Positions 1 through 61,200 of a stretch of 64,000 nucleotides of DNA are shown here, piece by piece. The DNA lies in assembly GCA_965655095.1 (NCBI GenBank), contig OZ296658.1:88660001-88724000 (forward strand), written 5' to 3'. Within the stretch, counting starts at the first letter, position 1; the number at the start of each line of letters is the position of its first letter. The DNA comes from Haplodiscus bocki (Eukaryota). A model generated the notes under the pieces. The model was given only the letters and a program-made list of their open reading frames with translations. It was not told the origin of the DNA and made no database searches. The position numbers were made by a program, and so were the translations under genes.

Positions 1-142
1 GATTAATGAGTTCTTTAGTTTACAGACTGGTTTTTATGATGTAACTGATCGAAACATTATATGAATTTTTTTAATCCCTTTTTCATATGAACAAAAACCT
101 GTTGATAATGGTAGTTTAGAATAATTGCAGATGGCGAATACC

Positions 143-31200: not shown

Positions 31201-33063
31201 ACAGACTGGTTTTTATGATATAACTGATCGAAACATTATATGAAATTTTTTAATCCCTTTTTCATATGAACGAAAACTGTTGATAATGGTAGTTTAGAAT
31301 GCCCCAAACAACATCATTTTCAATTCAACTCGGAATTGGCTGAAAAATATGGGAATGATAGAAATGTAGTTGAGGTTTTTCATAGTTTGTGAGACCTTTT
31401 TTTACTGAACATAGAAAAAAGGACATCCGATGACATTTTTGAAGGCGGCATAGTTATGTGGTTCAGTATGCAGTGAGCAATGTGGGTTAAAAAAAATTAT
31501 GGGGCCATTTATTTGATCCAAGTGAAATTAATATCATCATTGCACCGGGTTAATGTAAAGTAGCTGACATCGATAAAGCAATGTAAACAGAAGTCTAAAC
31601 ATATGACTTCTCTTCGAACAACACATCATGGTTTAGTGTACACTTAGTAAAAGAATGAACTATTACGTTTTAATATTCATTTTGGGAGCTGTACAACAGG
31701 TTGCTTGGGTTTTAGAGTATATCTTTGACTACTCAAATATTGATGAGGAAGTTTTTATGAAAACTATAAAAGAGAATATGCATGCCTAAAAATTGTATTC
31801 CTATTCTTTTGAAAATAAAGGGTTTTGTAAAAAGGCTTCAAAAAGTGGTTTTCTTCCAAATTAAGATTCTGAACTGGTTAAAAATGGATTCTTGTTGCTA
31901 CTTAAGCTTTGAGACATAATGGTTTTCCTAGATCAAGCTTCATTTCTGAATTACTGCAAAATCTTTAGCTGTTAGTTAAAGATGTTAGTTAAAAGAACAT
32001 TATTTACATTTCAAAATAGAACTGGCTGATTCATTTGGAAAATTTGGAACTAGTGGCGACAATTTTGTTTTTTTTTTGTGAGATGTTAATTAATAAAAAC
32101 ATAGAAAAGGCTACACTTAAGGGTTTAAAAGATGACATCTGCTTTCATTTTTTGAAAACGGCATAGATGTGTTGATCAGTATGCAATCAACAATATGGGT
32201 AGAAAGTTTATGGGATCCGTTTGGTTTGATCCAATTGAAATCATTATCATGGTTCCAACTGGAATTTTTAAAATAACTGATCAATAACTGAAGCAATGGG
32301 AATAGAAGTTTAATCAGATGATTTATCAAGGGAATCAATTCTAACAACACATCTTGTTTTAGTGTACACTTAATAAAGGAATGAAGTGTTAGGTTTTAAC
32401 TATTCTTTTTGGAAGCTGTAGAACACTTTGTTTGTTTTTTGGAGTTTTTCTTTGACTACTTAAAGAATGATGAGAGGGTTGTTACTATAAAAGAGAATAT
32501 GCATGCTTAAAATTTAGCTTTCGATTCGTTTTGAAAAAAGGATTTTGTTGAAAAACGCTTCAAGAAAGCGACTTCCAAAGTGAGCTGCGAAACTGATTAA
32601 ATATGGAGTCTTGTACATCTTTCTGCTTCAAGACTCAATGGTTTTTTTAATGCTTAGCTTCTGAAGTACTGGAAGATGATAAGCTGTAACCTAAAGTTGT
32701 CATACCCTAGAATTTGTTTTCAAGTTTCCAAGGACAATTAGGATGTTTTGTGAACCAAGATTTTTTTTCGTGGTTAGGTGTGTGCTTCTGGGAAATCGGG
32801 AAATAATGAAGAATTCCATCTGAAAACTTTGAAGTCACCCATGTCCTCTATCTTTGGCGTCAGAAAACTGCAAAAGTTGTTGAATAATCTGCAAAAGAAA
32901 GTTTGGGTCGATGTTGGCACGCATCAATATTTTCAAAATCGAAAATGAAGTTGGTATGGAGGCAGTTAAACAATATAAAGATGCCTTTTCTTTGTATGTG
33001 AAGAATCGAGTAATTGGTACAGAGGCTGTTGGATATAGCCTTCATGTTGGCTGTTTGCTAAAA

Positions 33064-39000: not shown

Positions 39001-42000
39001 AAGGGAAAAATAGTTTGTTGATTCAGCTTTAAGAAAGTGGTTTTCTTCCAAGGTAAACTGCTGAACTGGTTAAATATGGAATCTTTTTGGTATTTGCGCT
39101 TTAGGACATATTGTTTTTTTTAGATCTTGCTTCGCTTCTGAATTACTGGAAAATGATCAGTTGTAAATTGAAATTGTCTTGCTCTAGACTTCGTTTTTAA
39201 ATGTCCAGTGATAGTTAGGATGTTGTTGCATAGACCATAAATTTTTTTCGTGGTCAAGTGTATGCTTCTTAGAAATTAGGAAATAATGGAGAAGTTCTTC
39301 TGAACGCTGTAAAGCCGCCCATGTGTTTTATCTTACTTGTCAGAAAAATGCTAATAACTGTTGAAAAACCTGCAAAAAAGTCGATGTTGGCCCAAGCGAC
39401 AATATTTTCAAAATCTAAAATAAAGTTGGTATGGAGGCTGTTAAACAACAAAGATGCTTTTTCTTTGAATCCGAAGAAATAAATAAATGGTATAAAAGCT
39501 GCTGAATGTAGTCTTCTAGTTGACTGCTAATATAAGCAGTAGCATAAAATGATTTCTATTGCTGAAACCAAAGAATTTAGTCAACGCGAATTCCTTAATC
39601 GTAATACATTTGTTAAATCACAGTGTTTAAATTCAATAGTTACTATCCAGGTTACCAAGTTACAGAACGGTTATTTTTTGCGTAAGCAGTTGGATACCCC
39701 AAACAACATAGAATATAATTCAAAATTGAACTGGCTGAAAAATATGGGAATGATGGAAATGTAGGTGATGTTTTTTATTTTTTTTTTACGAGACCTGAAT
39801 TATTGAACATGGAAAAAGGTATAAAGGAGTGTTTAAAAAATGATATGCGCTGACGATTTTTGAAGACGGCCTAGATATGTAGTTGAATATTAATTGACAA
39901 TATGGGTAAAAAGTTTATGGGGCCATTTGGTTTGATCCAAAGGGAGATTGATATCATCATTCCACCTGGTTTATGTGAAGTAACTGACATCGTCAAAACA
40001 ATGGGAATAGAATCTGAAGCACGTGGTTTCTCAAATCTATCTGTTCGAACAACACATGAGGATTTAGTGTACAATTAATAAGAATGAAATTTGAGGTTTT
40101 ACTATTCATTTTGGTGGAAGCTGTGGAGCAATTTGTTTGTTTTGGACTTTGACTTTGACTACTCCAACAATGATGAGGAATTTTTTATGGAAGCTATAAG
40201 AGATTATGTATGCTTGAAATTGAGCTTTCGATTCATTTAAAAGGGAAAAATAGTTTGTTGATTCAGCTTTAAAAAGTGGTTTTCTTCCAAGGTAAACTGC
40301 TGAACTGGTTAAATATGGAATCTTTTTGGTATTTGCGCTTTAGGACATATTGTTTTTTTTAGATCTTGCTTCGCTTCTGAATTACTGGAAAATGATCAGT
40401 TGTAAATTGAAATTGTCTTGCTCTAGACTTCGTTTTTAAATGTCCAGTGATAGGATGTTGTTGCATAGACCATAAATTTTTTTCGTGGTCAAGTGTATGC
40501 TTCTTAGAAATTAGGAAATAATGGAGAAGTTCTTCTGAACGCTGTAAAGCCGCCCATGTGTTTTATCTTACTTGTCAGAAAAATGGTAAAAACTGTTGAA
40601 AAACCTGCAAAAAAGTCGATGTTGGCACAAGCGGCAATATTTTCAAAATCTAAAATAAAGTTGGTATGGAGGCTGTTAGACAACAAAGATGCTTTTTCTT
40701 TGAATCCGAAGAAATAAATAAATGGTATAAAAGCTGCTGAATGTAGTCTTCTAGTTGACTGCTAATATAAGCAGTAGCATAAAATGATTTCTTTTGCTGA
40801 AACCAAAGAATTTAGTCAACGCGAATTCCTTAATCGTAATACATTTGTTAAATCACAGTGTTCAAATTCAATAGTTACTATCCAGGTTACCAAGTTACAG
40901 AACGGTTATTTTTTGCGTAAGCAGTTGGATACGCCAAACAACATAGAGTATAAGTCAAAATTGAACTGGCTGAAAAATATGGGAATGATGGAAATGTAGG
41001 TGTTGTTTTTTATTTTTTTTTACGAGACCTGAATTATTGAACATGGAAAAAGGTATAAAGGAGTGTTTAAAAAATGATATGCGCTGACGTTTTTTGAAGA
41101 CGGCATAGATATGTAGTTCAATATTAATTGACAGTTTGGGTAAAAAGTTTATGGCGCCATTTGGTTTGATCCAAAGGAGATTGATATCATCATTCCACCT
41201 GGATTATGTGAAGTAACTGACATCGTTAAAACAATGGGAATAGAATCTTAAGCACATGGTTTCTCCAACATATCTGTTCGAACAACACATGAGGATTTAG
41301 TGTACAATTAATGAAAGAATGAAATTTGAGGTTTTACTATTCATTTTGGTGGAAGCTGTAGAACAATATGTTTGTTTTGGAGTTTGACTTTGACTACTCC
41401 AACAATGATGAGGAATTTTTTATGGAAGCTATAACAGAGATTATGTATGCTTGAAATTGAGCTTTCGATTCATTTAAAAGGGAAAAATAGTTTGTTGACT
41501 CAGCTTTTGAAAAGTGGTTTTCTTCCAAGGTAAACTGCTGAACTGGTTAAATATGGAATCTTTTTGGTATTTGCGCTTTAGGACATATTGTTTTTTTTAG
41601 ATCTTGCTTCGCTTCTGAATTACTGGAAAATGATCAGTTGTAAATTGAAATTGTCTTGCTCTAGACTTCGTTTTTAAATGTCCAGTGATAGTTAGGATGT
41701 TGTTTCATAGACCATAAATTTTTTTCGTGGTCAAGTGTATGCTTCTTAGAAATTAGGAAATAATGGAGAAGTTCTTCCGAACGCTGTAAAGCCGCCCATG
41801 TGTTTTATCTGACTTGTCAGAAAAATGCTAAAAACTGTTGAAAAACCTGCAAAAAAGTCGATGTTGGCACAAGCGACAATATTTTCAAAATCTAAAATAA
41901 AGTTGGTATGGAGACTGTTAAACAACAAAGATGCTTTTTCTTTGAATCCGAAGAAATAAATAAATGGTATAAAAGCTGTAGAATATAGTCTTCAAGTTGA

Positions 42001-45000
42001 CTGTTTGCTAAAATAAGCAACAGCATAAAATGATTTCTATTGCTGAAACCAAAGAATTTAGTCAACGCGAATTCCTTAATCGTAATACATTTGTTAAATC
42101 GCAGTGTTTAAATTCAATAGTTACTATCCAGGTTACCAAGTTACAGAACGGTTATTTTTTGCGTAAGCAGTTGGATACCCCAAACAACATAATATTTAAT
42201 TCAAAATTGAACTGGCTGAAAAATATGGGAATGATGGAAATGTAGTTGATGTTTTTTATTTTTTTTTACGAGACCCGAATTATTGAACATGGAAAAAGGT
42301 ATAAAGGAGTGTTTAAAAACTGATATGCGCTGACGTTTTTTGAAGACGGCATAGATATGTAGTTCAATATTAATTGACAATATGGGTAAAAAGTTTATGG
42401 GGCCATTTGGTTTGATCCAAAGGAGATTGATATCATCATTCCACCTGGTTTATGTGAAGTAACTGACATCGATAAAACAATGGGAGTAGATTTTCTTCAA
42501 TAAGCCTAAAAAGTGATTTTCTTCTGAAGTAAGCTGCTGAACTGGTTAAATATGGAATCTTTTTGGTATTTGCGCTTTAGGACATATTGTTTTTTTTCGA
42601 TCTTGCTTCGCTTCTGAATTACTGGAAAATGATCAGTTGTAAATTGAAATTCTCTTGCTCTAGACTTCGTTTTTAAATGTCCAGTGACAGTTAGGATGTT
42701 GTTTCATAGACCATAAATTTTTTTCGTGGTCAAGTGTATGCTTCTTAGAAATTAGGAAATAATGGAGAAGTTCTTCTGAACGCTGTAAAGCCGCCCATGT
42801 GTTTTATCTTACTTGTCAGAAAAATGCTAAAAACTGTTGAATAACCTGCAACAAAAGTCGATGTTGGCACAAGCGACAATATTTTCAAAATCTAAAATAA
42901 AGTTGGTATGGAGGCTGTTAAACAACAAAGATGCTTTTTCTTTGAATCCGAAGAAATAAATAAATGGTATAAAAGCTGCTGAATGTAGTCTTCTAGTTGA
43001 CTGCTAATATAAGCAGTAGCATAAAATGATTTCTTTTGCTGAAACCAAAGAATTTAGTCAACGCGAATTCCTTAATCGTAATACATTTGTTAAATCAGAG
43101 TGTTTAAATTCAATAGTTACTATCCAGGTTACCAAGTTACAAAACGGTTATTTTTTGCGTAAGCAGTTGGATACCCCAAACAACATAGATTATAATTCAA
43201 AATTGAACTGGCTGAAAAATATGGGAATGATGGAAATGTAGGTGATGTTTTTTATTTTTTTTACGAGACCTGAATTATTGAACATGGAAAAAGGTATAAA
43301 GGAGTGTTTAAAAAATGATATGCGCTGACGTTTTTTGAAGACGGCATAGATATGTAGTTCAATATTAATTGACAATATGGGTAAAAAGTTTATGGGGCCA
43401 TTTGGTTTGATCCAAAGGAGATTGATATCATCATTCCACCTGGTTTATGTGTAGTAACTGACATCGTTAAAACAATGGGAATAGAATCTTAAGCACATGG
43501 TTTCTCAAACATATCTGTTCGAACAACACATGAGGATTTAGTGTACAATTAATAAAGGAATGAAATTTGAGGTTTTACTATTCATTTTGGTGGAAGCTGT
43601 AGAACAATTTGTTTGTTTTGGAGTTTGACTTTGACTACTCCAACAATGATGAGGAATTTTTTATGGAAGCTATAACAGAGATTATGTATGCTTGAAATTG
43701 AGCTTTCGATTCATTTAAAAGGGAAAAATAGTTTGTTGACTCAGCTTTTGAAAAGTGGTTTTCTTCCAAGGTAAACTGCTGAACTGGTTAAATATGGAAT
43801 CTTTTGGTATTTGCGCTTTAGGACATATTGTTTTTTTTAGATCTTGCTTCGCTTCTGAATTACTGGAAAATGATCAGTTGTAAATTGAAATTGTCTTGCT
43901 CTAGACTTCGTTTTTAAATGTCCAGTGATAGTTAGGATGTTGTTTCATAGACCATAAATTTTTTTCGTGGTCAAGTGTATGCTTCTTAGAAATTAGGAAA
44001 TAATGGAGAAGTTCTTCCGAACGCTGTAAAGCCGCCCATGTGTTTTATCTGACTTGTCAGAAAAATGCTAAAAACTGTTGAAAAACCTGCAAAAAAGTCG
44101 ATGTTGGCACAAGCGACAATATTTTCAAAATCTAAAATAAAGTTGGTATGGAGGCTGTTAAACAACAAAGATGCTTTTTCTTTGAATCCGAAGAAATAAA
44201 TAAATGGTATAAAAGCTGTAGAATATAGTCTTCAAGTTGACTGTTTGCTAAAATAAGCAACAGCATAAAATGATTTCTATTGCTGAAACCAAAGAATTTA
44301 GTCAACGCGAATTCCTTAATCGTAATACATTTGTTAAATCGCAGTGTTTAAATTCAATAGTTACTATCCAGGTTACCAAGTTACAGAACGGTTATTTTTT
44401 GCGTAAGCAGTTGGATACCCCAAACAACATAATATTTAATTCAAAATTGAACTGGCTGAAAAATATGGGAATGATGGAAATGTAGTTGATGTTTTTTATT
44501 TTTTTTTACGAGACCCGAATTATTGAACATGGAAAAAGGTATAAAGGAGTGTTTAAAAACTGATATGCGCTGACGTTTTTTGAAGACGGCATAGATATGT
44601 AGTTCAATATTAATTGACAATATGGGTAAAAAGTTTATGGGGCCATTTGGTTTGATCCAAAGGAGATTGATATCATCATTCCACCTGGTTTATGTGAAGT
44701 AACTGACATCGATAAAACAATGGGAGTAGATTTTCTTCAATAAGCCTAAAAAGTGATTTTCTTCTGAAGTAAGCTGCTGAACTGGTTAAATATGGAATCT
44801 TTTTGGTATTTGCGCTTTAGGACATATTGTTTTTTTTCGATCTTGCTTCGCTTCTGAATTACTGGAAAATGATCAGTTGTAAATTGAAATTCTCTTGCTC
44901 TAGACTTCGTTTTTAAATGTCCAGTGATAGTTAGGATGTTGTTTCATAGACCATAAATTTTTTTCGTGGTCAAGTGTATGCTTCTTAGAAATTAGGAAAT

Positions 45001-48000
45001 AATGGAGAAGTTCTTCTGAACGCTGTAAAGCCGCCCATGTGTTTTATCTTACTTGTCAGAAAAATGCTAATAACTGTTGAAAAACCTGCAAAAAAGTCGA
45101 TGTTGGCACAAGCGACAATATTTTCAAAATCTAAAATAAAGTTGGTATGGAGGCTGTTAAACAACAAAGATGCTTTTTCTTTGAATCCGAAGAAATAAAT
45201 AAATGGTATAAAAGCTGCTGAATGTAGTCTTCTAGTTGACTGCTAATATAAGCAGTAGCATAAAATGATTTCTTTTGCTGAAACCAAAGAATTTAGTCAA
45301 CGCGAATTCCTTAATCGTAATACATTTGTTAAATCAGAGTGTTTAAATTCAATAGTTACTATCCAGGTTACCAAGTTACAAAACGGTTATTTTTTGCGTA
45401 AGCAGTTGGATACCCCAAACAACATAGATTATAATTCAAAATTGAACTGGCTGAAAAATATGGGAATGATGGAAATGTAGGTGATGTTTTTTATTTTTTT
45501 TACGAGACCTGAATTATTGAACATGGAAAAAGGTATAAAGGAGTGTTTAAAAAATGATATGCGCTGACGTTTTTTGAAGACGGCATAGATATGTAGTTCA
45601 ATATTAATTGACAATATGGGTAAAAAGTTTATGGGGCCATTTGGTTTGATCCAAAGGAGATTGATATCATCATTCCACCTGGTTTTTGTGTAGTAACTGA
45701 CATCGTTAAAACAATGGGAATAGAATCTTAAGCACATGGTTTCTCAAACATATCTGTTCGAACAACACATGAGGATTTAGTGTACAATTAATAAAGGAAT
45801 GAAATTTGAGGTTTTACTATTCATTTTGGTGGAAGCTGTAGAACAATTTGTTTGTTTTGGAGTTTGACTTTGACTACTCCAACAATGATGAGGAATTTTT
45901 TATGGAAGCTATAACAGAGATTATGTATGCTTGAAATTGAGCTTTCGATTCATTTAAAAGGGAAAAATAAATTGTTGATTCAGCTTTAAAAAAGTGGTTT
46001 TCTTCCAAGGTAAACTGCTGAACTGGTTAAATATGGAATCTTTTTGGTATTTGCGCTTTAGGACATATTGTTTTTTTAGATCTTGCTTCGCTTCTGAATT
46101 ACTGGAAAATGATCAGTTGTTAATTGAAATTGTCTTGCTCTAGACTTCGTTTTTAAATGTCCAGTGATAGTTAGGATGTTGTTTCATAGACCATAAATTT
46201 TTTTCGTGGTCAAGTGTATGGTTCTTAGAAATTAGGAAATAATGGAGAAGTTCTTCTGAACGCTGTAAAGCCGCCCATGTGTTTTATCTGACTTGTCAGA
46301 AAAATGCTAAAAACTGTTGAATAACCTGCAGAAAAAGTCGATGTTGGCACAAGCGACAATATTTTCAAAATCTAAAATAAAGTTGGTATGGAGGCTGTTA
46401 AACAACAAAGATGCTTTTTCTTTGAATCCGAAGAAATAAATAAATGGTATAAAAGCTGTAGAATATAGTCTTCAAGTTGACTGTTTGCTAAAATAAGCAG
46501 CAGCATAAAATGTTTTCTATTGCTGAAACCAAAGAATTTAGTCAACGCGAATTCCTTAATCGTAATACATTTGTTAAATCGCAGTGTTTAAATTCAATAG
46601 TTACTATCCAGGTTACCAAGTTACAGAACGGTTATTTTTTGCGTAAGCAGTTGGATACCCCAAACAACATAATATTTAATTCAAAATTGAACTGGCTGAA
46701 AAATATGGGAATGATGGAAATGTAGGTGATGTTTTTTATTTTTTACGAGACCTGAATTATTGAACATGGAAAAAGGTATAAAGGAGTGTTTAAAAAATGA
46801 TATGCGCTGAAGTTTTTTGAAGACGGCATAGATATGTAGTTCAATATTAATTGACAATATGGGTAAAAAGTTTATGGGTCCATTTGGTTTGATCCAAAGG
46901 AGATTGGTATCATCATTCCACCTGGTTTATGTGAAGTAACTGACATCGTTCAAACAATGGGAATAGAATCTTAAGCACATGGTTTCTCAAACATATCTGT
47001 TCGAACAACACATGAGGATTTAGTGTACAATTGATAAAAGAATGAAATTTGAGGTTTTACTCTTCATTTTGGTGGAAGCTGTAGAATAATTTGTTTGTTT
47101 TGGAGTTTGACGTTGACTACTCCAACAATGATGAGGATTTTTTTATGGAAGCTATAACAGAGATTATGTATGCTTGAAATTGAGCTTTCGATTCATTTAA
47201 AAGGGAAAATTAGTTTGTTGATTCAGCTTTAAAAAAGTGGTTTTCTTCCAAGGTAAACTGCTGAACTGGTTAAATATGGAATCTTTTTGGTTTTTGCGCT
47301 TTAGGACATATTGTTTTTTTAGATCTTGCTTCGCTTCTGAATTACTGGAAAATGATCAGTTGTTAATTGAAATTGTCTTGCTCTAGACTTCGTTTTTAAA
47401 TGTCCAGTGATAGTTAGGATGTTGTTTCATAGACCATAAATTTTTTTCGTGGTCAAGTGTATGCTTCTTAGAAATTAGGAAATAATGGAGAAGTTCTGAA
47501 CGCTGTAAAGTCGCCCATGTGTTTTATCTTACTTGTCAGAAAAATGCTAAAAACTGTTGAATAACCTTCAAAAAAAGTCGATGTTGGCACAAGCGACAAT
47601 ATTTTCAAAATCTAAAATGAAGTTGGTATGGAGGCTGTTAAACAACAAGGATGCTTTTTCTTTGAATCCGAAGAAATAAATAAATGGTATAAAAGCTGTT
47701 GAATATAGTCTTCAAGTTGACTGTTTGCTAATATAAGCAGTAGCATAAAATGATTTCTTTTGCTGAAAGCGAATAATTTAGTCAACGCGAATTCCTTAGT
47801 CGTAACACATTTGTTATATCACAAAATACGAATTCAACAGTTACTATCCAGGATACAAAGTTACAGAACGGTTATTTTTTGCGTAAGCAGTTGGATACCC
47901 CAAACAACATATTTTACAATTCAAATGTGAACTGGCTGAAAATTATGGCAATGATGAGAACTTTTGGTGTTGTTTTTTTTTTACGAGACCTGAATTATTG

Positions 48001-48240
48001 AACATGGAAGAAGGTATAAAGGAGTGTTTAAAAAATGATATGCGCTGACGTTTTCTGAAGACGGCATAGATATGTAGTTCAATATTAATTGACAATATGG
48101 GTGAAAAAATTTATGGGGCCATTGTTTTGGTCCAAGTGAGCTTGATATCATCATTCCACCTGGTCTATGTGAAGTAACTGACATCGATAAAACAATGGGA
48201 GTAGATTTTCTTCAATAAGCCTAAAAAGTGATTTTCTTCC
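33064..48240 (+). repeat. Satellite family B: 13 tandem monomers of ~1.24 kb, including two internal ~995 bp deletion variants
   Basis: The start of the MISIAETKEF-type ORF recurs at 33350, 34590, 35829, 37068, 38306, 39549, 40784, 42030, 43026, 44270, 45265, 46510 and, broken, at 47750. Spacings are 1235-1246 bp except 996 and 995 bp. Confidence 0.98.
41480..45960 (+). repeat. Higher-order repeat: two copies of a ~2240 bp (short + long) B dimer
   Basis: ORF starts 42030 to 44270 (2240 bp) and 43026 to 45265 (2239 bp). Variant GTTGACTCAGCTTTTGAAAAG at ~41494 and ~43734, and the short-unit junction at 42481 and 44721. Ends are approximate. Confidence 0.9.
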
Positions 48241-50439
48241 GAAGTAAGCTGCTGAACTGGTTATTTATGGAATCTTGTTGGTGTTTCCGCTTTACGGCTT
48301 AATGGTTTTTTTATTACGCTTCGCCTCAAGTACTGGAACCCGAAAATTGTCATACTCTTGAATTTGTTTTTAAATTTCTAAGGATAAATAGGCTGTTGTT
48401 TTATGAACCATGAATTTTATTCGTTTTTAGGTGTCTGATTCTGGAAAATTAGGAAATAATGACGAAGTGCTTCTTGGAGCTTTAAAGTCACGCGTGTCCT
48501 CTATGTTTGGCGTCAGAAAAATGCAAAAAATTGTTGAATAACCTGCAAAAAATTTCGATGTTGGTACAAGCGACAATATTTTCAAAATCGAAAATAAAGT
48601 TGGTATGGAGGCAGTTGAACAACATAATGATGCCTTTTCTTCGCATCTGAAACATCATGTAATTGGTATACAAGCTGTTGAATACACAGCTATCAAAAAG
48701 ATACCAACAGCTCAAAAAGTTGATATTTCTGAGAAGAACTGAAATCAGAGATTCAATATCGCTGAGATTTCTGAACTTACTACTGTTGACGAAAGGAAGT
48801 CTAGATCGAAGAAAAAAGAATTATTTGCGAAGTTGATTCAAGTAAGAAAATGATGTTCAAAGTTGTTGCTCTGTAATTACAACCTCGTTTGTAATTTTTC
48901 TGAAGGAAACTCAAATCAAAAGTTTGATTTACAAAAGAATAAAGTGCGAAACAGCCTTTTTGGGAAGAGAAATCCTTTCAAAAATGTTGTTCAAATGTTG
49001 TAGACGTGTTTTTCAAAATGGGTTTTCTGGCAGTTGTTAGCATTGACTGATTTTTTTTAGCAAACTATGACCTAAAAATTAGGGCAACAAGCAATTTTAT
49101 TTACAAGAAATACTTACTGAATTAGAATTGGTTAGTGTGAATACATATACGAAATTTGGTCTTGCATTAGCAGCATCTGCCTCCATCCAAGTTCTGGAAC
49201 TCATTGGATTTTGTTGTATGAGAATTACCGTTTAAATTCGTATGTTTGTGCGCTACGAAAAGTAGTACTGAATCAACTGCCAAAGGAGCGTGGTGATTGT
49301 ATTCACTTATAATACCGAATCCAAGAACGATAGCTTACTTGCACGTTAGTGTTTGTATTCTGTATCTTTTTAATCTTATGAGTTTCAAATATCAGAACAA
49401 ATGACCAATATTCCAAACCTGTGGAGTCAGGTTCCTCAGCGAAGAGTTTTCGAGTCTTCTATTGAACCTCTCAAAATCGATTGAACGAAGCACTACAGGA
49501 GAACTTCGAGGTTTTGCAGTTAATTTATCATATCTTCGAGATGTGTTCACTGCTTCATTAACTGCTAGCTGGCTGGAAGGTTTTTGACTTTGTCGGTAAA
49601 AATAAATGGACCCATCTGAATCTACTTCAATAATGAATGTGAGTCTCTTCTACTAAAAAGTCTCTTCTTTTAAACTTCAATTTCAGATATCAAAAATACT
49701 CGAAACCTGTGGAGTTAGGTTCCTCAGCGAAGCTATTTCAAATCTTCGATATGACATCTCAAAGGATAACAGGATAACAACCTCGTTGATGAATCTAATC
49801 AAATCGGTTGAACAAAGCACTACAAAACCTAAAATTTTTGCAGCTCAATGATCGTCTCTTCGAGATGTGTTCACTGCTTCATTAACTGCTAGCTGGCTGG
49901 AAGGTTTTTGACTTTGTCGGTAAAAATAAATGGACCGATCTGAATCTACTTCAATAATGAATGTGAGTCTCTTCTACTAAAAAGTCTCTTCTTTTAAACT
50001 TCAATTTCAGATATCAAAAATACTCGAAACCTGTGGAGTTAGGTTCCTCAGCGAAACTATTTCAAATCTTCGATATGACATCTCAAAGGATAACAGGATA
50101 ACAACCTCGTTGATGAATCTAATCAAATCGATTGAACAAAGCACTACAAAACCTAAAATTTTTGCAGCTCAATGATCGTCTCTTCGAGATCTGTTGACTG
50201 CGTCAATAACTGCTAGTTGACTGGTAGATTTTTGGGTTTGTCGGTAAAAATTCATAGACCGATCTGAATCCACTTCAATAAGAATGTGAGTCTCCTCTAC
50301 TAGAGGTAACAACATCACTTTGTTAGTAATAGAAAATACAAGTAGAAAACCCTCAAGAGACTGGAATTTTGGATGAACGATTCCAAGAAATGTTTTTCTA
50401 TTGGAATTCCATTAGTGCTTCGGGAAAAATGGATGGTGG
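48240..50439 (+). repeat. Single-copy diverged relict monomer (D) at the B/C transition
   Basis: Colinear with A/C landmarks (TTTGGCGTCAGAAAA ~48506, GAATTAGAATTGGTTAGTGTG ~49119, GTTCCTCAGCGAA 49431) but has many private substitutions and a private deletion at ~48688. It grades into C-type sequence by ~49600. Confidence 0.85.
49537..50190 (+). repeat. Near-perfect 324 bp tandem duplication, giving three copies of the GTTCCTCAGCGAA module
   Basis: CGAGATGTGTTCACTGCTTCATTAACTGCTAGCTGGCTGG at 49537 and 49861. GTTCCTCAGCGAA at 49431, 49719 and 50043. Confidence 0.92.
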
Positions 50440-50744
50440 GATTGAGGAGTTCTCAAGTTTACAGAATAGTTTGAATGATTTGACTGATAGAAACATTATA
50501 TGAATTTTTCTAACCAGTGTTTGTTATGAACGAAAACCTGTAGATGATGGTATTTCAAAATTAATGCTGATGGCGCATACCCCAAGCAACATAATTTACA
50601 ATTCAATCTAGAACTGGCTGATTCTTATGGAAGTGATAGAAGAATTAGCGAGGATTTTCAATATTTGCGTGTTTTTGGATATCAAAAACGTAGGAGAAGC
50701 TATAATTGAAGGTGTAAAAGATGACTTCCGCTGTCATTTTTTGA

Positions 50745-50984
50745 AGGAGGCATAGATGTGTAGATCAGTATGCAATCAACAACATGGGTAAAAAGTCTTT
50801 TGGCTCCGTTTGGTTCGATCCAGCTGAAATTATCATCAAACCACCTGGATTATGTAAAATAACTGACATCGATAAAGCAATTGGAATTGAAGTTTGAACA
50901 GATGATTTCTCAAGGAAATGTCTTCGCACAACACATCATCATTTAGTGTACACTTTAGGAAATAATGAAGTTTTGGGTTTTACT
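50745..50984 (+). pseudogene. Decayed coding fragment resembling a Polinton/adintovirus-type penton (minor capsid) protein (best-preserved copy)
   Basis: 80 codons with one stop: RRHRCVDQYAINNMGKKSFGSVWFDPAEIIIKPPGLCKITDIDKAIGIEV*TDDFSRKCLRTTHHHLVYTLGNNEVLGFT. The (I)PPG-x-Y-x-I-x-D-I ... LGF pattern is one I associate with such pentons; the match is by eye only. Confidence 0.45.
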
Positions 50985-50985
50985 T

Positions 50986-51600
50986 TTCATTTTAGAAGCT
51001 GTAGAACAATTCGTTTGTCTTTGACTGGTCGAACAGTGATGAGGAAATTGTTATGGAGGCTATAAAAGAGATTGTGCTTGCCTAAAAATTAGCTTTCGAT
51101 TCATGCAAAAGAGAAAAGGAGTTTGTTGAATAAGCTCTAAAAAATGGTTTTCTTCCCACGTAAGCTGCTGAACTGGTTAAAAGTAGAATATTGTTACTTA
51201 AGCTTTAAGACCTAATTTTTTTAGATCACTCTTCGCTTGTGACTTACTGCACAATGATAAGCTCTGAAATAATTTCGTCTAGCTTTAGAATTCGCTCATA
51301 GAATTCCGGAGATGGTTTGATGTTGTTTCATAGACTATAATTTTTTTTCGTGGTCAAGTGTGTGCTCCTTAGAAATTAGGAAATAGTGAAGTTCTTGTAA
51401 AAGCTGTAAAGTAACCCGTGTTCTTTATGTCTCGTGTCAGAAAAATGCTAAAAATTGTTGAAGAATCTGTAGAAAAGTATGGGTTGATGTTGGCACAAGC
51501 ATCAGATAATTTCATACTCGAAAATGCAGTTGTTTTTAGGCAGTTAAAGAGCCTAAAAGTCCGGCTATTTGCATGCGAATAATTAAATAATTGGTATAGA
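50986..51600 (+). pseudogene. Decayed DUF4116-like repeats in C unit 1 (clearest 25-residue periodicity)
   Basis: From 51038 one frame reads DEEIVMEAIKEIVLA*KLAFDSCKR / EKEFVE*ALKNGFLPT*AAELVK, so DEEIV and EKEFV are exactly 25 codons apart. Preceded by FILEAVEQ (50986) and followed by KLGNSEVLVKAVK (~51373). Confidence 0.7.
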
Positions 51601-52569
51601 AGCTATTGAATATGGTCTCCAGGTTGGATGTTTGCTAATCTAAACAGTAGCTTAAATTGAATTCCAGTGCTGAAATCAAGGATATTAGTCATCGCGAATT
51701 CATTAATGGTAATACTTTTGTTGAATCACAAGGAATAAAATTGACTCCGTTTTCCAGTTTAAAATGTTAGAGAAAGGTTATTTTTAACGTGATCAGTTCG
51801 GTAGAAAAATAGGTACAACTTCTTTCCTAATATTTAGGACAACCACTGGTTTGGAACAAACAGTTTTTTTCGATGAGATAGAAAACTAACTACTAAAAAG
51901 GAACCAACAATTAAAAAAAATACTATCCTGAAAGGAACTGAAATCAGAGATTTGATTTTGCTGAAGTTTCTGGAGTTACTATAAATGACGAAAGGGAGTT
52001 TAGTTCAAGGAAACGAATTTATTGCGAATTGAGATCAAATCGAAAAGTTGATGTTTAAGGTTGATGCTCTGTTAAAAACAAACTTTCAAAGTGGTTTTCC
52101 TGAAGGAAGCTCAATTCGATGCTTTAATGTACAATAGACTAAAGTGCGAAACAGGATATTTGTGGAGACAAATCTTTTCGAAAATGATGTTCAAGTGCTG
52201 TAATTTTTTTCAAAATTGGTTTTTTTGCAATTGTTAGCATTAGAAGTTTTAGCAAATTATGATCCATGAAATAACACAACAAGCAAAGTAATATAAAAGA
52301 AATACTCATTGAATTAGAATTGGTTAGTGTGAATACTTATATGAAATTTGGTCTTGCATTAACAGCATGTGCCTTCAACCAACTTCTGGAACTCACTGGA
52401 TTTTGTTGTGTGAAAATTACCATTTAATATCGTATGGTTGTGCGCAACGAAAAGTTTTACTGAATCAACTGCCAAGGGAGCGTGGCGATTGTATTAACCT
52501 TTAATAAGGAATCCATCAACGATAGCTTACTTGCACGTTAGTGTTTGTATTCTGGATCTTTTTAACCTT

Positions 52570-53205
52570 ATGAGTTTCAAATATCAGAACAAATGACCAT
52601 TATTTCAAACCTGCGGAGTAAGGTTCCTCAGCGAAGCGTTTTCGAGTCTCCTATTGGACATCTCAAAGGATAACAACCTCTTTCATAGACCCAAATAGAA
52701 ATCGATTGAACGAAGCACTACAAAACTTCAAAATTTTGCAGTCAATTTGTCATGTCTTCGAGTTGTGTTGACTGCATCACTAACTGCGTGTTGACGGGAA
52801 GATTTTTGAATTTGTCGTTAAAAATTAATGGACCGATCTGAATCTACTTCAATAATGAATGTGAGTCTCTTCTACTAAAAAGTCTCTTCTTTTAAACTTC
52901 AATTTCAGATATCAAAAATACTCGAAACCTGTGGAGTTAGGTTCCTCAGCGAAGCTATTTCAAATCTTCGATATGACATCTCAAAGGATAACAGGATAAC
53001 AACCTCGTTGATGAATCTAATCAAATCGATTGAACAAAGCACTACAAAACCTAAAATTTTTGCAGCTCAATGATCTTCTCTTCGGGATCTGTTGACTGCG
53101 TTAATAACTGCTAGTTGACTGGAAGATTTTTGGGTTTGTCGGTAAAAATTCATAGACCGATCTGAATCCACTTCAATGAGAATGTGAGTCTCCTCTACTA
53201 GAGGT
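52570..53205 (+). repeat. Diverged ~320 bp internal tandem duplication within each C monomer
   Basis: GTTCCTCAGCGAAGC at 52623 and 52941, each followed by ACATCTCAAAGGATAACA, ATCGATTGAAC and GACCGATCTGAATC. A monomers have one copy and B has none. Confidence 0.9.
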
Positions 53206-55215
53206 AACAACATCACTTTGTTAGTAATAGAAAATACAAGTAAAAAACCCTCGAGAGACTGGAATTTTAGATGAATGTTTCCAAGAAATGTTTTTATTGG
53301 AATTCCATTAGTGATTCGGGAAAAATGGATGGTGGGATTGAGGAGTTCTCAAGTTTACAAAATAGTTTGAATGATTTGACTGATAGAAACATTATATGAA
53401 TTTTTCTAACCAATGTTTGTTATGAACGAAAACCTGTAGATGATGGTATTTCAAAATTAATGCTGATGGCGCATACCCCAAGCAACATAATTTACAATTC
53501 AATCTAGAACTGGCTGATTCTTATGGAAGTGATAGAAGAATTAGCGAGGATTTTCAATATTTGCGTGTTTTTGGATATCAAAAACGTAGGAGAAGCTATA
53601 ATTGAAGGTGTAAAAGATGACTTCCGCTGTCATTTTTTGAAGGAGGCATAGATGTGTAGATCAGTATGCAATCAACAACATGGGTAAAAAGTCTTTTGGC
53701 TCCGTTTGGTTCGATCCAGTTGAACTTATCATCAATCCACCTGGATTATGTAAAATAACTGACATCGATAAAGCAATTGGAATTCAAGTTTGAACAGATG
53801 ATTTCTCAAGGAAATGTCTTCCCACAACACATCATCATTTAGTGTACACTCTAGGAAAGAATGAAGTTTTGGGTTTTACTTTTCATTTTAGAAGCTGTAG
53901 AACAAATCGTTTGTGTCTTTGACTGGTCGAACAGTGATGAGGAAATTGTTATGGAAGCTATAAAAGAGATTGTGCATGCCTAAAAATTAGCTTTCGATTC
54001 ATTCAAAAGAGAAAAGGAGTTTGTTGAATAAGCTCTAAAAAATGGTTTTCTTCCCACGTAAGCTGCTAAACTGGTTAAAAGTAGAATATTGTTGTTACTT
54101 AAGCTTTAAGACCTAATTTTTTTTAGATCACTCTTCGCTTCTGACTTACTGCTCAATGATAAGCTGTAAAATAAATTTGTCTAGCTTTAGAATTCGCTCA
54201 TAGAATTCCGGAGATGGTTTGATGTTGTTTCATAGACCATAGACTTTTTTCGTGGTCAAGTGTGTGCTCCTTAGAAATTAGGAAATATTGAAGTTCATGT
54301 AAAAGCTGTAAAGTCACCCGTGTTCTTTGTGTTTCGCGTCAGAAAAATGCTAAAAATTGTTGAAGAATCTGTAAAAAAGTATGGGTTGATGTTGGCACAA
54401 GCATCAGATAATTTCATACTCGAAAATGCAGTTGTTTTGAGGCAGTTAAAGAACCTCAAATTCCGGCTATTTGCATGCGAATAATTAAATAATTGGTATA
54501 GAAGCTATTGAATATGGTCTCCAAGTTGGATGTTTGCTAATCTAAACAGTAGCATAAATTGAATTCCAGTGCTGAAATCAAGGATATTAGTCATCGCGAA
54601 TTCCTTAATGGTAATACTTTTGTTGAATCACAAGGAATAAAATTGACTCCGTTTTCCAGTTTACAATGGTAGAGAAAGGTTATTTTTAACGTGATCAGTT
54701 CGGTAGAAAAATAGGTACAACTTCTTTCCTAATATTTAGGACAACCACTGGTTTGCAACAAACAGTTTTTTTTTCGATGAGATGGAAACCTAACTACTAA
54801 AAAGGAACCAACAACTCAAAAAAAATACTATCCTGAAGGAACTGAAATCAGAGATTTGATTTTGCTGAAGTTTCTGGAGTTACTATAAATGACGAAAGGG
54901 AGTTTAGTTCAAGGAAACGAATTTCTTGCGAATTGAGATCAAATCGAAAAGTTGATGTTTAAGGTTGATGCTCTGTTAAAAACAAACTTTCAAAGTGGTT
55001 TTCCTGAAGGAAACTCAATTCGGTGCTTTAATGTACAATAGAATAAAGTGCGAAACAGCATTTTTGTGGAGACAAATTGTTTCAAAAATGATGTTCAATT
55101 GTTGTATTTTTTTTTCAAATTTGGTTTTTTTGCAATTGTTAGCATTAGTAGAATTTTTAGCAAATTATGATCCATGAAATAACACAACAAGCAAAGTATT
55201 ATAAAAGAAATACTC

Positions 55216-55267
55216 ATTGAATTAGAATTGGTTAGTGTGAAATTGAATTAGAATTGGTTAGTGTGAA
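55216..55267 (+). repeat. Perfect 26 bp tandem duplication (ATTGAATTAGAATTGGTTAGTGTGAA)x2
   Basis: Also at 58152-58203 and 61084-61135. Single copy in C unit 1 (~52308), in relict D and in the A units. Confidence 0.95.
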
Positions 55268-58200
55268 TACTTATATGAAATTTGGTCCTGCATTAACAGC
55301 ATCTGCCTTCAACCAACTTCTGGAACTCACTGGATTTTGTTTTCTGAAAATTACCGTTTAAATTCGTATGGTTGTGCGCAACGAAAAGTATTACTGAATC
55401 AACTGCCAAGGGAGCGTGGCGATTGTATTAACCTTTAATACGGAATCCGTCAACGATAGCTTACTTGCACGTTAGTGTTTGTATTCTGGATCTTTTTAAC
55501 CATATGAGTTTCAAATATCAGAACAAATGACCATTATTTCAAACCTGCGGAGTAAGGTTCCTCAGCGAAGCGTTTTCGAGTCTCCTATTGGACATCTCAA
55601 AGGATAACAACCTCTTTCATAGACCCAAATAGAAATCGATTGAACGAAGCACTACAAAACTTCAAAATTTTGCAGTCAATTTGTCATGTCTTCGAGTTGT
55701 GTTGACTGCATCACTAACTGCGTGTTGACTGGAAGATTTTTGAATTTGTCGTTAAAAATTAATGGACCGATCTGAATCTACTTCACTAATGAATGTGAGT
55801 CTCTTCTACTAAAGAGTCTCTTTTTTTAAACTTTAATTTCAGATATCAAAACAAATACTCGAAACCTGTGGAGTTAGGTTCCTCAGCGAAGCTATTTCAA
55901 ATCTTCGATATGACATGTCAAAGGATAACAGGATAACAACCTCGTTGATGAATCTAATCAAATCGATTGAACAAAGCACTACGAAACCTAAAATTTTTGC
56001 AGCTCAATGATCGTCTCTTTGAGATCTGTTGACTGCGTCAATAACTGCTAGTTGACTGGAAGATTTTTGGATTTCTCGGTAAAAATTCATAGACCGATCT
56101 GAATGCACTTCAATAAGAATGTGAGTCTCCTCTACTAGAGGTAACAACATCACTTTGTTAGTAATAGAAAATACAAGTAGAAAACCCTCGAGAGACTGGA
56201 ATTTTAGATGAATGTTTCCAAGAAATGTTTTTCTATTGGAATTCCATTAGTGCTTCGGGAAAAATGGATGGTGGGATTGAGGAGTTCTCAAGTTTACAAA
56301 ATAGTTTGAATGATTTGACTGATAGAAACATTATATGAATTTTTCTAACCAATGTTTGTTATGAACGAAAACCTGTAGATGATGGTATTTCAAAATTAAT
56401 GCTGATGGCGCATACCCCAAGCAACATAATTTACAATTCAATCTAGAACTGGTTGATTCTTATGGAAGTGATAGAAGAATTAGCGAGGATTTTCATTATT
56501 TGCGTGTTTTTGGATATCAAAAACGTAGAAGCTATAATTGAAGGTGTAAAAGATGACTTCCGCTGTCATTTTTTGAAGGAGGCATAGAAATGTAGATCAG
56601 TATGCAATCAACAACATGGGTGAAAAGTCTTTTGGCTCCGTTTGGTTCGATCCAGTTGAAATTATCATCAATCCACCTGGATTATGTAAAATAACTGACA
56701 TCGATAAAGCAATTGGAATTCAAGTTTGAACAGATGATTTCTCAAGGAAATGTCTTCCCACAACACATCATCATTTAGTGTACACTCTAGGAAAGAATGA
56801 AGTTCTGGGTTTTACTTTTCATTTTAGAAGCTGTAGAACAAATCGTTTGTGTCTTTGACTGGTCGAACAGTGATGAGGAAATTGTTATTGAAGCTATAAA
56901 AGAGATTGTGCATGCCTAAAAATTAGCTTTCGATTCATTCAAAAGAGAAAAGGAGTTTGTTGAATAAGCTCTAAAAAATGGTTTTCTTCCCACGTAAGCT
57001 GCTAAACTGGTTAAAAGTAGAATATTGTTGTTACTTAAGCTTTAAGACCTAATTTTTTTTAGATCACTCTTCGCTTCTGACTTACTGCTCAATGATAAGC
57101 TCTGAAATAATTTCGTCTAGCTTTAGAATTCGCTCATAGAATTCCGGAGATGGTTTGATGTTGTTTCATAGACCATAGACTTTTTTCGTGGTCAAGTGTG
57201 TGCTCCTTAGAAATTAGGAAATAGTGAAGTTCTTGTAAAAGCTGTAAAGTCACCCGTGTTCTTTGTGTTTCGCGTCAGAAAAATGCTAAAAATTGTTGAA
57301 GAATCTGTAGAAAAGTATGGGTTGATGTTGGCACAAGCATCAGATAATTTCATACTCGAAAATGCAGTTGTTTTGAGGCAGTTAAAGAACCTCAAATTCC
57401 GGCTATTTGCATGCGAATAATTAAATAATTGGTATAGAAGCTATTGAATATGGTCTCCAAGTTGGATGTTTGCTAATCTAAACAGTAGCATAAATTGAAT
57501 TCCAGTGCTGAAATCAAGGATATTAGTCATCGCGAATTCCTTAATGGTAATACTTTTGTTGAATCACAAGGAATAAAATTGACTCCGTTTTCCAGTTTAC
57601 AATGGTAGAGAAAGGTTATTTTTAACGTGATCAGTTCGGTAGAAAAATAGGTACAACTTCTTTCCTAATATTTAGGACAACCACTGGTTTGGAACAAACA
57701 GTTTTTTTTTCGATGAGATGGAAACCTAACTACTAAAAAGGAACCAACAACTCAAAAAAAATACTATCCTGAAGGAACTGAAATCAGAGATTTGATTTTG
57801 CTGAAGTTTCTGGAGTTACTATAAATGACGAAAGGGAGTTTAGTTCAAGGAAACGAATTTCTTGCGAATTGAGATCAAATCGAAAAGTTGATGTTTAAGG
57901 TTGATGCTCTGTTAAAAACAAACTTTCAAAGTGGTTTTCGTGAAGGAAACTCAATTCGATGCTTTAATGTACAATAGAATAAAGTGCGAAACAGCATTTT
58001 TGTGGAGACAAATTGTTTCAAAAATGATGTTCAATTGTTGTAATTTTTTTTCAAATTTGGTTTTTTTGCAATTGTTAGCATTAGTAGAATTTTTAGCAAA
58101 TTATGATCCATGAAATAACACAACAAGCAAAGTATTATAAAAGAAATACTCATTGAATTAGAATTGGTTAGTGTGAAATTGAATTAGAATTGGTTAGTGT

Positions 58201-61200
58201 GAATACTTATATGAAATTTGGTCCTGCATTAACAGCATCTGCCTTCAACCAACTTCTGGAACTCACTGGATTTTGTTTTCTGAAAATTACCGTTTAAATT
58301 CGTATGGTTGTGCGCAACGAAAAGTATTACTGAATCAACTGCCAAGGGAGCGTGGCGATTGTATTAACCTTTAATACGGAATCCGTCAACGATAGCTTAC
58401 TTGCACGTTAGTGTTTGTATTCTGGATCTTTTTAACCATATGAGTTTCAAATATCAGAACAAATGACCATTATTTCAAACCTGCGGAGTAAGGTTCCTCA
58501 GCGAAGCGTTTTGGAGTCTCCTATTGGACATCTCAAAGGATAACAACCTCTTTCATAGACCCAAATAGAAATCGATTGAACGAAGCACTACAAAACTTCA
58601 AAATTTTGCAGTCAATTTGTCATGTCTTCGAGTTGTGTTGACTGCATCACTAACTGCGTGTTGACTGGAAGATTTTTGAATTTGTCGTTAAAAATTAATG
58701 GACCGATCTGAATCTACTTCACTAATGAATGTGAGTCTCTTCTACTAAAGAGTCTCTTTTTTTAAACTTTAATTTCAGATATCAAAACAAATACTCGAAA
58801 CCTGTGGAGTTAGGTTCCTCAGCGAAGCTATTTCAAATCTTCGATATGACATGTCAAAGGATAACAGGATAACAACCTCGTTGATGAATCTAATCAAATC
58901 GATTGAACAAAGCACTACGAAACCTAAAATTTTTGCAGCTCAATGATCGTCTCTTTGAGATCTGTTGACTGCGTCAATAACTGCTAGTTGACTGGAAGAT
59001 TTTTGGATTTGTCGGTAAAAATTCATAGACCGATCTGAATGCACTTCAATAAGAATGTGAGTCTCCTCTACTAGAGGTAACAACATCACTTTGTTAGTAA
59101 TAGAAAATACAAGTAGAAAACCCTCGAGAGACTGGAATTTTAGATGAATGTTTCCAAGAAATGTTTTTCTATTGGAATTCCATTAGTGCTTCGGGAAAAA
59201 TGGATGGTGGGATTGAGGAGTTCTCAAGTTTACAAAATAGTTTGAATGATTTGACTGATAGAAACATTATATGAATTTTTCTAACCAATGTTTGTTATGA
59301 ACGAAAACCTGTAGATGATGGTATTTCAAAATTAATGCTGATGGCGCATACCCCAAGCAACATAATTTACAATTCAATCTAGAACTGGTTGATTCTTATG
59401 GAAGTGATAGAAGAATTAGCGAGGATTTTCATTATTTGCGTGTTTTTGGATATCAAAAACGTAGAAGCTATAATTGAAGGTGTAAAAGATGACTTCCGCT
59501 GTCATTTTTTGAAGGAGGCATAGATGTGTAGATCAGTATGCAATCAACAACATGGGTGAAAAGTCTTTTGGCTCCGTTTGGTTCGATCCAGTTGAAATTA
59601 TCATCAATCCACCTGGATTATGTAAAATAACTGACATCGATAAAGCAATTGGAATTCAAGTTTGAACAGATGATTTCTCAAGGAAATGTCTTCGCACAAC
59701 ACATCATCATTTAGTGTACACTCTAGGAAAGAATGAAGTTCTGGGTTTTACTTTTCATTTTAGAAGCTGTAGAACAATTCGTTTGTGTCTTTGACTGGTC
59801 GCACAGTGATGAGGAAATTGTTATGGAGGCTATAAAAGAGATTGTGCTTGCCTAAAAATTAGCTTTCGATTCATGCAAAAGAGAAAAGGAGTTTGTTGAA
59901 TAAGCTCTAAAAAATGGTTTTCTTCCCACGTAAGCTGCTGAACTGGTTAAAAGTAGAATATTGTTACTTAAGCTTTAAGACCTAATTTTTTTAGATCACT
60001 CTTCGCTTCTGACTTACTGCACAATGATAAGCTCTGAAATAATTTCGTCTAGCTTTAGAATTCGCTCATAGAATTCCGGAGATGGTTTGATGTTGTTTCA
60101 TAGACCATAGACTTTTTTCGTGGTCAAGTGTGTGCTCCTTAGAAATTAGGAAATAGTGAAGTTCTTGTAAAAGCTGTAAAGTCACCCGTGTTCTTTGTGT
60201 TTCGCGTCAGAAAAATGCTAAAAATTGTTTAAGAATCTGTAGAAAAGTATGGGTTGATGTTGGCACAAGCTTCAGATAATTTCATACTCGAAAATGCAGT
60301 TGTTTTGAGGCAGTTAAAGAACCTCAAATTCCGGCTATTTGCATGCGAATAATTAAATAATTGGTATAGAAGCTATTGAATATGGTCTCCAAGTTGGATG
60401 TTTGCTAATCTAAACAGTAGCATAAATTGAATTCCAGTGCTGAAATCAAGGATATTAGTCATCGCGAATTCCTTAATGGTAATACTTTTGTTGAATCACA
60501 AGGAATAAAATTGACTCCGTTTTCCAGTTTACAATGGTAGAGAAAGGTTATTTTTAACGTGATCAGTTCGGTAGAAAAATAGGTACAACTTCTTTCCTAA
60601 TATTTAGGACAACCACTGGTTTGGAACAAACAGTTTTTTTTTCGATGAGATGGAAACCTAACTACTAAAAAGGAACCAACAACTCAAAAAAAATACTATC
60701 CTGAAGGAACTGAAATCAGAGATTTGATTTTGCTGAAGTTTCTGGAGTTACTATAAATGACGAAAGGGAGTTTAGTTCAAGGAAACGAATTTCTTGCGAA
60801 TTGAGATCAAATCGAAAAGTTGATGTTTAAGGTTGATGCTCTGTTAAAAACAAACTTTCAAAGTGGTTTTCGTGAAGGAAACTCAATTCGATGCTTTAAT
60901 GTACAATAGAATAAAGTGCGAAACAGCATTTTTGTGGAGACAAATTGTTTCAAAAATGATGTTCAATTGTTGTAATTTTTTTTCAAATTTGGTTTTTTTG
61001 CAATTGTTAGCATTAGTAGAATTTTTAGCAAATTATGATCCATGAAATAACACAACAAGCAAAGTATTATAAAAGAAATACTCATTGAATTAGAATTGGT
61101 TAGTGTGAAATTGAATTAGAATTGGTTAGTGTGAATACTTATATGAAATTTGGTCCTGCATTAACAGCATCTGCCTTCAACCAACTTCTGGAACTCACTG

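What the first reader, a model, noticed from the sequence alone, without database searches (positions are those of the whole stretch)
50986..51200. The satellite monomer is a fossil DUF4116-type repeat-protein gene
Seen: combining families gives DEEIVMEAIKENMHA*xLAFDSFKR followed exactly 25 codons later by EKEFVE*ALKNG. Further units elsewhere read FASELLEND, YAS*KLGNNGEVLLNAVK, EVGMEAVKQ, QNGFA and SASIQLLDSLDFVL. Established (from memory): DUF4116 (PF13475) is built from ~25-residue units like DKEIVLEAVKQNGxALxYASEELKN and is patchily distributed in bacteria, large DNA viruses and some protists. The stop at position 16 (TAA/TGA) is one substitution from Leu TTA. The ORF track misses this because decay preceded amplification. 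A kb-scale satellite made from such a gene is unusual.
Basis: partly seen in the sequence, partly recalled or inferred. Interest (0 to 1): 0.78.

Follow-up and report, generated by a model that had tools for sequence, protein, structure and literature searches.

The report
Tandem repeat from dead DUF4116 gene
Each unit of this 132-kb, single-locus tandem repeat carries the decayed remains of a DUF4116 helical-repeat gene that was already broken before it was copied; this is a real but ordinary case of a satellite seeded by a dead gene.

Summary
At 50986-51200 the + strand reads, in one frame, a strong DUF4116-type 25-residue unit from 51038. A second unit follows exactly 25 codons later at 51113, with a partial unit before and a weaker one after.

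The resemblance is not chance:
- The best unit scores 23-31 bits on a profile of this genome's own intact DUF4116 units. Dinucleotide shuffles give about 2 ± 3 bits.
- All 96 hits in the array are on the + strand.
- A single-frame read-through with X at stops matches Pfam-confirmed DUF4116 frames of the same genome at E about 5e-7.
- Pfam names DUF4116, and nothing else consistently, for stop-free pieces from three separate parts of the monomer. Each piece stays under Pfam's cut-off.

Two stops are shared by all repeat families, and changes between families show no codon-position bias. So decay came before amplification.

The array is one locus (C11:88,650,475-88,782,214, about 67 cores). No intact parent gene or dispersed copy was found.

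"Unusual" is not supported. Gene- and transposon-derived kb-scale arrays are a known kind. This scan had already reached the same reading of this same array from an overlapping window (s1-382588).

The parts
50986..51037 (+). Tail of unit 0 (FILEAVEQ...), the DUF4116-like unit before the strong one. The homologous unit in family A starts 75 nt before unit 1 (3766 to 3841).
   Evidence: It scores 9.3-12.4 bits in family A copies. Pfam gives DUF4116 at E 0.008-0.06 for stop-free pieces 53855-53980 and 28396-28545, which span units 0-1.
51038..51112 (+). Unit 1, the best-kept DUF4116 unit. It has a stop at residue 16 that is a stop in every family.
   Evidence: 25.7-30.6 bits against shuffles of 2 ± 3. 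The shared stop column is shown.
51113..51187 (+). Unit 2 (EKEFVE, stop, ALKNG...), exactly 25 codons after unit 1. The stop at residue 7 is specific to some families. The stop at residue 17 is shared by all families.
   Evidence: (8.8 bits across the unit 1/2 boundary).
51188..51262 (+). Unit 3, weak. It ends in an 'ASxxLLxND'-type tail, clearer in copies 53930-54160 and in family B (FASELLEND).
   Evidence: (2.4 bits). On its own it is not significant.
51373..51579 (+). Two later units in another frame (KLGN-SEVLVKAVK..., then MLKIVEESVEKYG...).
   Evidence: 10.2-10.7 bits. Pfam gives DUF4116 at E 0.022 and 0.1 for the homologous open pieces 54275-54481 and 63088-63294.
5042..5116 (+). Family A copy of a further unit (EKEVGMEAVKQ...), inside a 127-aa stop-free piece (4877-5257).
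   Evidence: 14.8 bits. Pfam gives DUF4116 at E 0.057 for 4877-5257 and E 0.004 for 29534-29914.
35210..35284 (+). Family B copy of unit 1, with stops at residues 16 and 18.
   Evidence: 23.0 bits.
50745..50894 (+). A 50-aa stop-free piece just upstream, which another note calls penton-like. It stays open in many copies of the D-type families. Its origin is unknown.
   Evidence: No Pfam family. All 73 genome candidates lie inside the array. There is only a slight third-position excess on small, non-independent counts.
1..32050 (+). Family A: units of about 3.25 kb, each with one partial and one full copy of the ~1.2-kb core.
   Evidence: Cores are 96.5% alike within the family.
32050..48300 (+). 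Family B: units of about 1.24 kb that are nearly all core.
   Evidence: Cores are 98% alike within the family and 78% alike to families A and D.
48300..50300 (+). Transition stretch holding a diverged core piece and a 324-bp tandem repeat (49474-50302).
50300..64000 (+). Family D: 2.93-kb units. The array runs on to window coordinate about 122,200 (C11:88,782,214).
   Evidence: Cores are 97% alike within the family and 73% alike to family A.

Best explanation
A stretch of about 3 kb, holding a fragment of an already dead DUF4116 (alpha-solenoid, 25-residue repeat) gene, was copied head to tail at one place on contig C11. Presumably this happened by unequal crossing-over or replication slippage. 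The copies then split into lineages that are now 73-91% alike: A, B, and D with its relatives. Each lineage was re-amplified locally, giving 96-98% identity within lineages and units of 3.25, 1.24 and 2.6-2.9 kb. The result is a 132-kb array of about 67 cores, all in one orientation.

The DUF4116 reading frame is a fossil. It carries shared and private stops and frameshifts and is under no coding constraint, so the array today is non-coding repeat DNA.

Shown: the homology to DUF4116, the shared stops, the single locus, and the layered identities. Inferred: the mechanism of amplification, the lack of present function, and whether the parent was a host gene or cargo of a mobile element.
For: Homology to DUF4116:
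- Pfam names DUF4116 as the only recurrent family.
- The profile of natural units scores 23-31 bits against shuffles of 2 ± 3.
- The two-unit HMM gives E 4.6e-7 for family D, 2.5e-4 for B and 5e-3 for A, all on the + strand.
- phmmer of the X-read-through hits L007 at 7.3e-7 and L001 at 3.3e-6. Pfam scores those frames as DUF4116 at 1e-54 to 1e-57.
- Strand exclusivity is 96 to 0.
- Unit spacing of 75 nt is seen.

Fossil state:
- Two stop columns are shared by all families.
- Mismatches between families are spread evenly over codon positions.

Single locus:
- All 40 scored of 67 DNA candidates, all 103 protein candidates and all 73 upstream-piece candidates lie in C11:88.650-88.782 Mb.
- The array bounds come from blastn.

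Layering.
Against: No single stop-free piece reaches Pfam's gathering score (12.6-17 bits against 24.9). Beyond the first 3-4 units the chain is no better than shuffles, so the length of the original gene fragment is uncertain. No parent gene was found, so the origin is open. No RNA data were on hand, so the absence of transcription is not shown.
Confidence: 0.87

Rival explanations
1. The monomer is a piece of a Polinton-like (or other) mobile element. The DUF4116 fossil would then be that element's cargo gene, and the upstream piece a fossil viral gene such as the penton. On this reading the array is an endogenous-virus fragment turned satellite. This rivals only the origin, not the DUF4116 reading.
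For: DUF4116 frames are scattered over all chromosomes in very many copies (1363 candidates), as expected of mobile cargo. Several sit next to RING and GFD-repeat frames repeated at different loci. In L005 a frame with a YxDTD-like motif lies upstream of a DUF4116 frame (this is my reading and Pfam did not confirm it). First-reader notes in this scan call such genes Polinton cargo (unchecked).
Against: No Polinton hallmark family was hit by any of 135 pieces of the monomers. The 'penton-like' piece has no Pfam hit and no relative outside the array. The fossil resembles the L007/L001 class, not the RING/GFD class that those notes describe. tblastn of frames from natural loci against the monomers gave only noise.
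Confidence: 0.3
2. The resemblance to DUF4116 is a chance or compositional effect of AT-rich repeat DNA.
For: Each Pfam hit is below the curated cut-off. With 135 queries, single hits at E about 0.01 are expected by chance.
Against: z is about 7-12 against dinucleotide shuffles. The - strand and the reversed sequence give nothing. Three non-overlapping parts of the monomer hit the same family out of 24,736. E is 5e-7 to 7e-7 against the genome's own DUF4116 proteins.
Confidence: 0.03
3. The array is still in use, for example as a cluster of short expressed frames (the 50-aa and 127-aa open pieces) or as a source of regulatory or small RNAs.
For: The 50-aa piece stays open across copies only 66-92% alike, with a slight third-position excess. 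A 127-aa open piece exists in family A.
Against: The open pieces are not open in all families: there are 1-3 stops in A module 1 and in B. The counts are small and the copies share ancestry. No protein family is hit and there is no relative elsewhere. No RNA run was available.
Confidence: 0.04

Closest known systems
DUF4116 (Pfam PF13475) repeat proteins
   Same: Units of 25 residues with the D-x-E-[IV]-V-x-x-A-[VI]-K ... A-S-x-x-L pattern. Tandem spacing of 25 codons. Significant similarity to Pfam-confirmed members in the same genome. The family is predicted to be an alpha-solenoid (PMC8078820).
   Different: Here it is a broken fossil with shared stops and frameshifts. No piece passes Pfam's cut-off by itself, and no open gene is present.
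Gene-derived macrosatellites (e.g. human D4Z4, a 3.3-kb unit derived from a DUX retrogene; from my own knowledge)
   Same: A kb-scale unit, a head-to-tail array at one locus, and a unit descended from a protein-coding sequence.
   Different: D4Z4 units keep an open reading frame that can be expressed. Here the frame was dead before amplification, and the units have diversified into several higher-order forms.
Transposon- or gene-fragment-derived tandem arrays noted elsewhere in this genome (hAT-insertion array; recombinase-fragment array; scan notes s1-366627 and s1-381246, not checked by me)
   Same: The same genome, the same kind of kb-scale single-locus array, and a decayed coding fragment.
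   Different: The seed sequence is different: DUF4116 rather than a transposase or recombinase.

Membership tests
DUF4116 (PF13475) | Match to the Pfam profile at or above the gathering score (24.9 bits) | tested here: inconclusive
   Stop-free pieces score 12.6-17.0 bits (E 0.004-0.1), with DUF4116 the only family hit. The pieces are cut short by stops, and the tool takes no read-through by reference.
DUF4116 (PF13475) | Significant sequence similarity to confirmed members | tested here: met
   The read-through with X gives E 7.3e-7 to L007 and 3.3e-6 to L001, which score 190 and 181 bits on PF13475. The two-unit HMM of natural units gives E 4.6e-7.
DUF4116 (PF13475) | Tandem units of about 25 residues | tested here: met
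   Units 0, 1 and 2 are spaced by 75 nt. The 75-nt lag is top in families D and B. Later units are displaced by indels.
DUF4116 (PF13475) | An intact coding gene | tested here: not met
   There are stops in every unit, two of them shared by all families, and no codon-position bias. It is a fossil relative, not a working member.
Satellite / macrosatellite DNA | Head-to-tail tandem array of a kb-scale unit over tens of kb | tested here: met
   132 kb, about 67 cores, all on the + strand, with periods of 1.24, 2.6-2.9 and 3.25 kb.
Satellite / macrosatellite DNA | Presence at several loci or chromosomes (classical satellite) | tested here: not met
   Every candidate in the 1.5-Gb assembly lies in C11:88.650-88.782 Mb.
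Polinton/Maverick-derived sequence | Hallmark genes (protein-primed PolB, integrase, capsid or penton, packaging ATPase, protease) | tested here: not met
   None was hit among the 135 pieces of the monomers in Pfam. The 'penton-like' piece has no hit and no relative. Pfam covers Polinton capsid proteins poorly, so this is weak negative evidence.

The most novel reading that the evidence does not exclude
The array is a fragment of an endogenous Polinton-like virus (a cargo DUF4116 gene plus a neighbouring viral gene) that was captured and amplified into a 132-kb macrosatellite. That would be a virus-to-satellite route in a coral genome.
Probability: 0.15. Interest if true: 0.45.

Novelty: new member of a known kind. 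Interest (0 to 1): 0.22.

Why it matters
It gives a clean, datable example of how a dead repeat-protein gene fragment can seed a large locus-specific tandem array. The evidence for order is two stops shared by all lineages, followed by layered re-amplification. It also flags that DUF4116 genes are very abundant in this animal genome, which is not the distribution usually quoted for the family. It opens no new mechanism and does not bear on a long-standing question.

Tried and rejected
- A DNA search of the genome with the full 2.9-kb unit was not scored because it had too many candidates. A 371-base query worked.
- tblastn of frames from natural DUF4116 loci against the monomers gave only noise, because BLAST stops at the stop codons.
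- I looked for an intact DUF4116 gene in the 90 kb to the left and the 40 kb to the right of the array. Nothing scored above 10.3 bits.
- The parent search with the 127-aa open piece and with the 50-aa upstream piece found only hits inside the array.
- A frameshift-tolerant chain of 12 units gave support only for the first 3-4 units as a chain.
- The NLR and penton readings made by other notes for this array have no Pfam support.
- I did not use the read-laying tool. The only holders are contig-level runs of one study with no RNA, which cannot show expression.

Full report
**Layout of the window**

The window is G000:C11:88,660,001-88,724,000 of a 1.5-Gb eukaryotic assembly. Earlier notes of this scan call the organism a coral, which I did not verify. 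GC content is 33% throughout.

K-mer offsets and self-BLAST show three blocks of tandem units:
- about 3.25-kb units from 1 to about 32,000 (family A, each with one partial and one full copy of a ~1.2-kb core);
- about 1.24-kb units from about 32,000 to 48,300 (family B);
- 2.93-kb units from about 50,300 to the end (family D).

Between B and D lies a transition stretch with a 324-bp tandem repeat.

I fetched 100 kb on each side. blastn then puts the array at C11:88,650,475-88,782,214. That is 132 kb with about 67 cores, all in the same orientation.

Cores cluster into lineages that are 96.5-98% alike within a lineage and 73-91% alike between lineages.

Every genome-wide candidate lies inside this one array:
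- the 40 scored of 67 candidates for a 371-base DNA query;
- all 103 candidates for a 127-aa open piece;
- all 73 candidates for the 50-aa upstream piece.

**The observation**

In one frame, 51038-51112 reads a unit beginning DEEIVMEAIKE, with a stop at residue 16. The next unit, at 51113-51187, begins EKEFVE, then a stop, then ALKNG. It starts exactly 25 codons after the first. FILEAVEQ at 50986 belongs to the preceding unit. In family A that unit starts exactly 75 nt before unit 1.

**Is it more than chance?**

PF13475 is very common in this genome. At least 140 matches pass the cut-off, from only 150 of 1363 candidates scored, and they lie on all large contigs, many in open frames of 100-288 aa.

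From 86 intact units in 32 such loci I built a 25-column profile and scanned every 25-codon window:
- The best unit scores 25.7-30.6 bits in family D, 23.0 in B and 14.8 in A.
- Dinucleotide shuffles of the same monomers give maxima of about 2 ± 3 bits, with a 99th percentile of about 11.
- Across the 264 kb examined, all 96 hits above 9 bits inside the array are on the + strand. The flanks give only ten hits of 9.2-10.2 bits, eight of them copies of another repeat.

A two-unit HMM from 44 natural segments, run on single-frame read-throughs with X at stops, gives E 4.6e-7 for family D, 2.5e-4 for B and 5e-3 for A, always on the + strand.

I used the read-through of 53855-54169 as a phmmer query. 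It finds the frames of L007 (7.3e-7), L001 (3.3e-6), L005 (1.4e-4) and L011 (1e-3). Pfam scores L007, L001 and L005 as DUF4116 at E 1e-38 to 1e-57.

Pfam itself supports the reading, though weakly for each piece:
- Six of ten chosen stop-free pieces, from three non-overlapping parts of the monomer, hit DUF4116 as their only family. Scores are E 0.004-0.1 and 12.6-17 bits, under the 24.9-bit cut-off.
- In an unbiased scan of all 135 stop-free pieces of 33 aa or more, on both strands of one representative of each block, DUF4116 was the only family hit by more than one piece. All other hits were single noise-level hits.

At the DNA level, the 75-nt lag is the top autocorrelation lag in family D, and lags 73 and 75 are top in B. 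This is not so in A.

**How much of a gene is left?**

About five units can be recognised singly:
- units 0, 1 and 2;
- the KLGN/SEVLVKAVK and MLKIVEES pair at 51373-51579;
- the EKEVGMEAVKQ unit, best kept in family A at 5042.

A possible further unit lies upstream, near 50690.

A frameshift-tolerant chain search stays above shuffles mainly because of the first 3-4 units. So [quoted passage not shown] is shown. "A whole gene per monomer" is not.

**Order of events**

In an alignment of twelve representatives, the stop at residue 16 of unit 1 is a stop (TAA, TAG or TGA) in all eleven copies that cover that column. The stop at residue 17 of unit 2 is a stop in all twelve. Other stops are private to some families.

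Mismatches between families are spread evenly over the three codon positions. It has drifted since.

**Origin**

No intact parent was found in the flanks or elsewhere. The fossil is closest to the L007/L001/L005 class of natural frames. It is not close to the class that joins RING-like and GFD-repeat parts to DUF4116 (L006, L008, L009, L025).

Notes by other first readers call DUF4116 genes of this genome Polinton cargo, and call the piece at 50745-50984 penton-like. I found no Pfam hit for that piece and no relative of it outside the array. No viral hallmark appears in any piece of the monomers. The Polinton origin therefore stays a minority possibility.

All tests used the copies as they stand, with X at stops.

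**Comparison and verdict**

This is a gene-fragment-derived, single-locus macrosatellite. It is the same kind of thing as gene-derived arrays such as D4Z4 (from my own knowledge), and as the transposon-fragment arrays that other notes report in this genome (unchecked). The difference is that it was dead from the start.

A follow-up of an overlapping window (s1-382588) had already called this same array a single-locus 133-kb repeat built from a dead DUF4116 fragment. My independent tests agree.

Published text on DUF4116 is sparse. It covers a predicted alpha-solenoid fold (PMC8078820) and the domain's appearance among virus-derived genes of Symbiodiniaceae (PMC9651163).

The finding is correct and neatly documented, but ordinary.

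Noticed in passing
G000:C3:135,082,677-135,102,893 (L025 holds 135,087,200-135,088,200): PF13475 matches recur every ~5.06 kb in open frames of 128-244 aa. L025 shows a 228-aa open frame with GFD-type repeats plus DUF4116, and a C3HC4 RING-like frame on the other strand. This looks like a living tandem array of DUF4116 genes near the end of C3, a possible intact counterpart of the dead array studied here.
   Followed up: partly
window 50745-50894 (+): This 50-aa piece stays free of stops in most D-type copies, although they are only 66-92% alike at the protein level. It has a slight third-position excess. It has no Pfam family and no relative outside the array. The 'penton-like' label given by another note is not supported by these tests.
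   Followed up: partly
G000:C11:88,560,845-88,600,967 (L045-L049): Another repeated sequence recurs at irregular kb spacings in the left flank. One and the same 25-codon stretch turns up eight times. The neighbourhood about 3 Mb from the contig end seems rich in tandem or dispersed repeats.
   Followed up: no
L005:2790-3137 (-), upstream of the DUF4116 frame L005:1420-1791 (-): A 116-aa frame cut by the locus end contains a Y-I-D-T-D-like motif, reminiscent of motif C of protein-primed B-family DNA polymerases. Pfam did not confirm it. If real, this DUF4116 gene sits in a Polinton-like element.
   Followed up: partly
G000:C9:68.20-68.67 Mb (L001, L007, L010): Many of the best PF13475 matches cluster within about 0.5 Mb of C9. 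They include a 288-aa open frame with a hydrophobic N-terminal stretch followed by seven or so DUF4116 units.
   Followed up: no
window 49474-50302: A 324-bp tandem repeat (2.6 copies, 93% matches) sits at the junction between families B and D. A related copy lies inside each D unit near 52879-53070.
   Followed up: no
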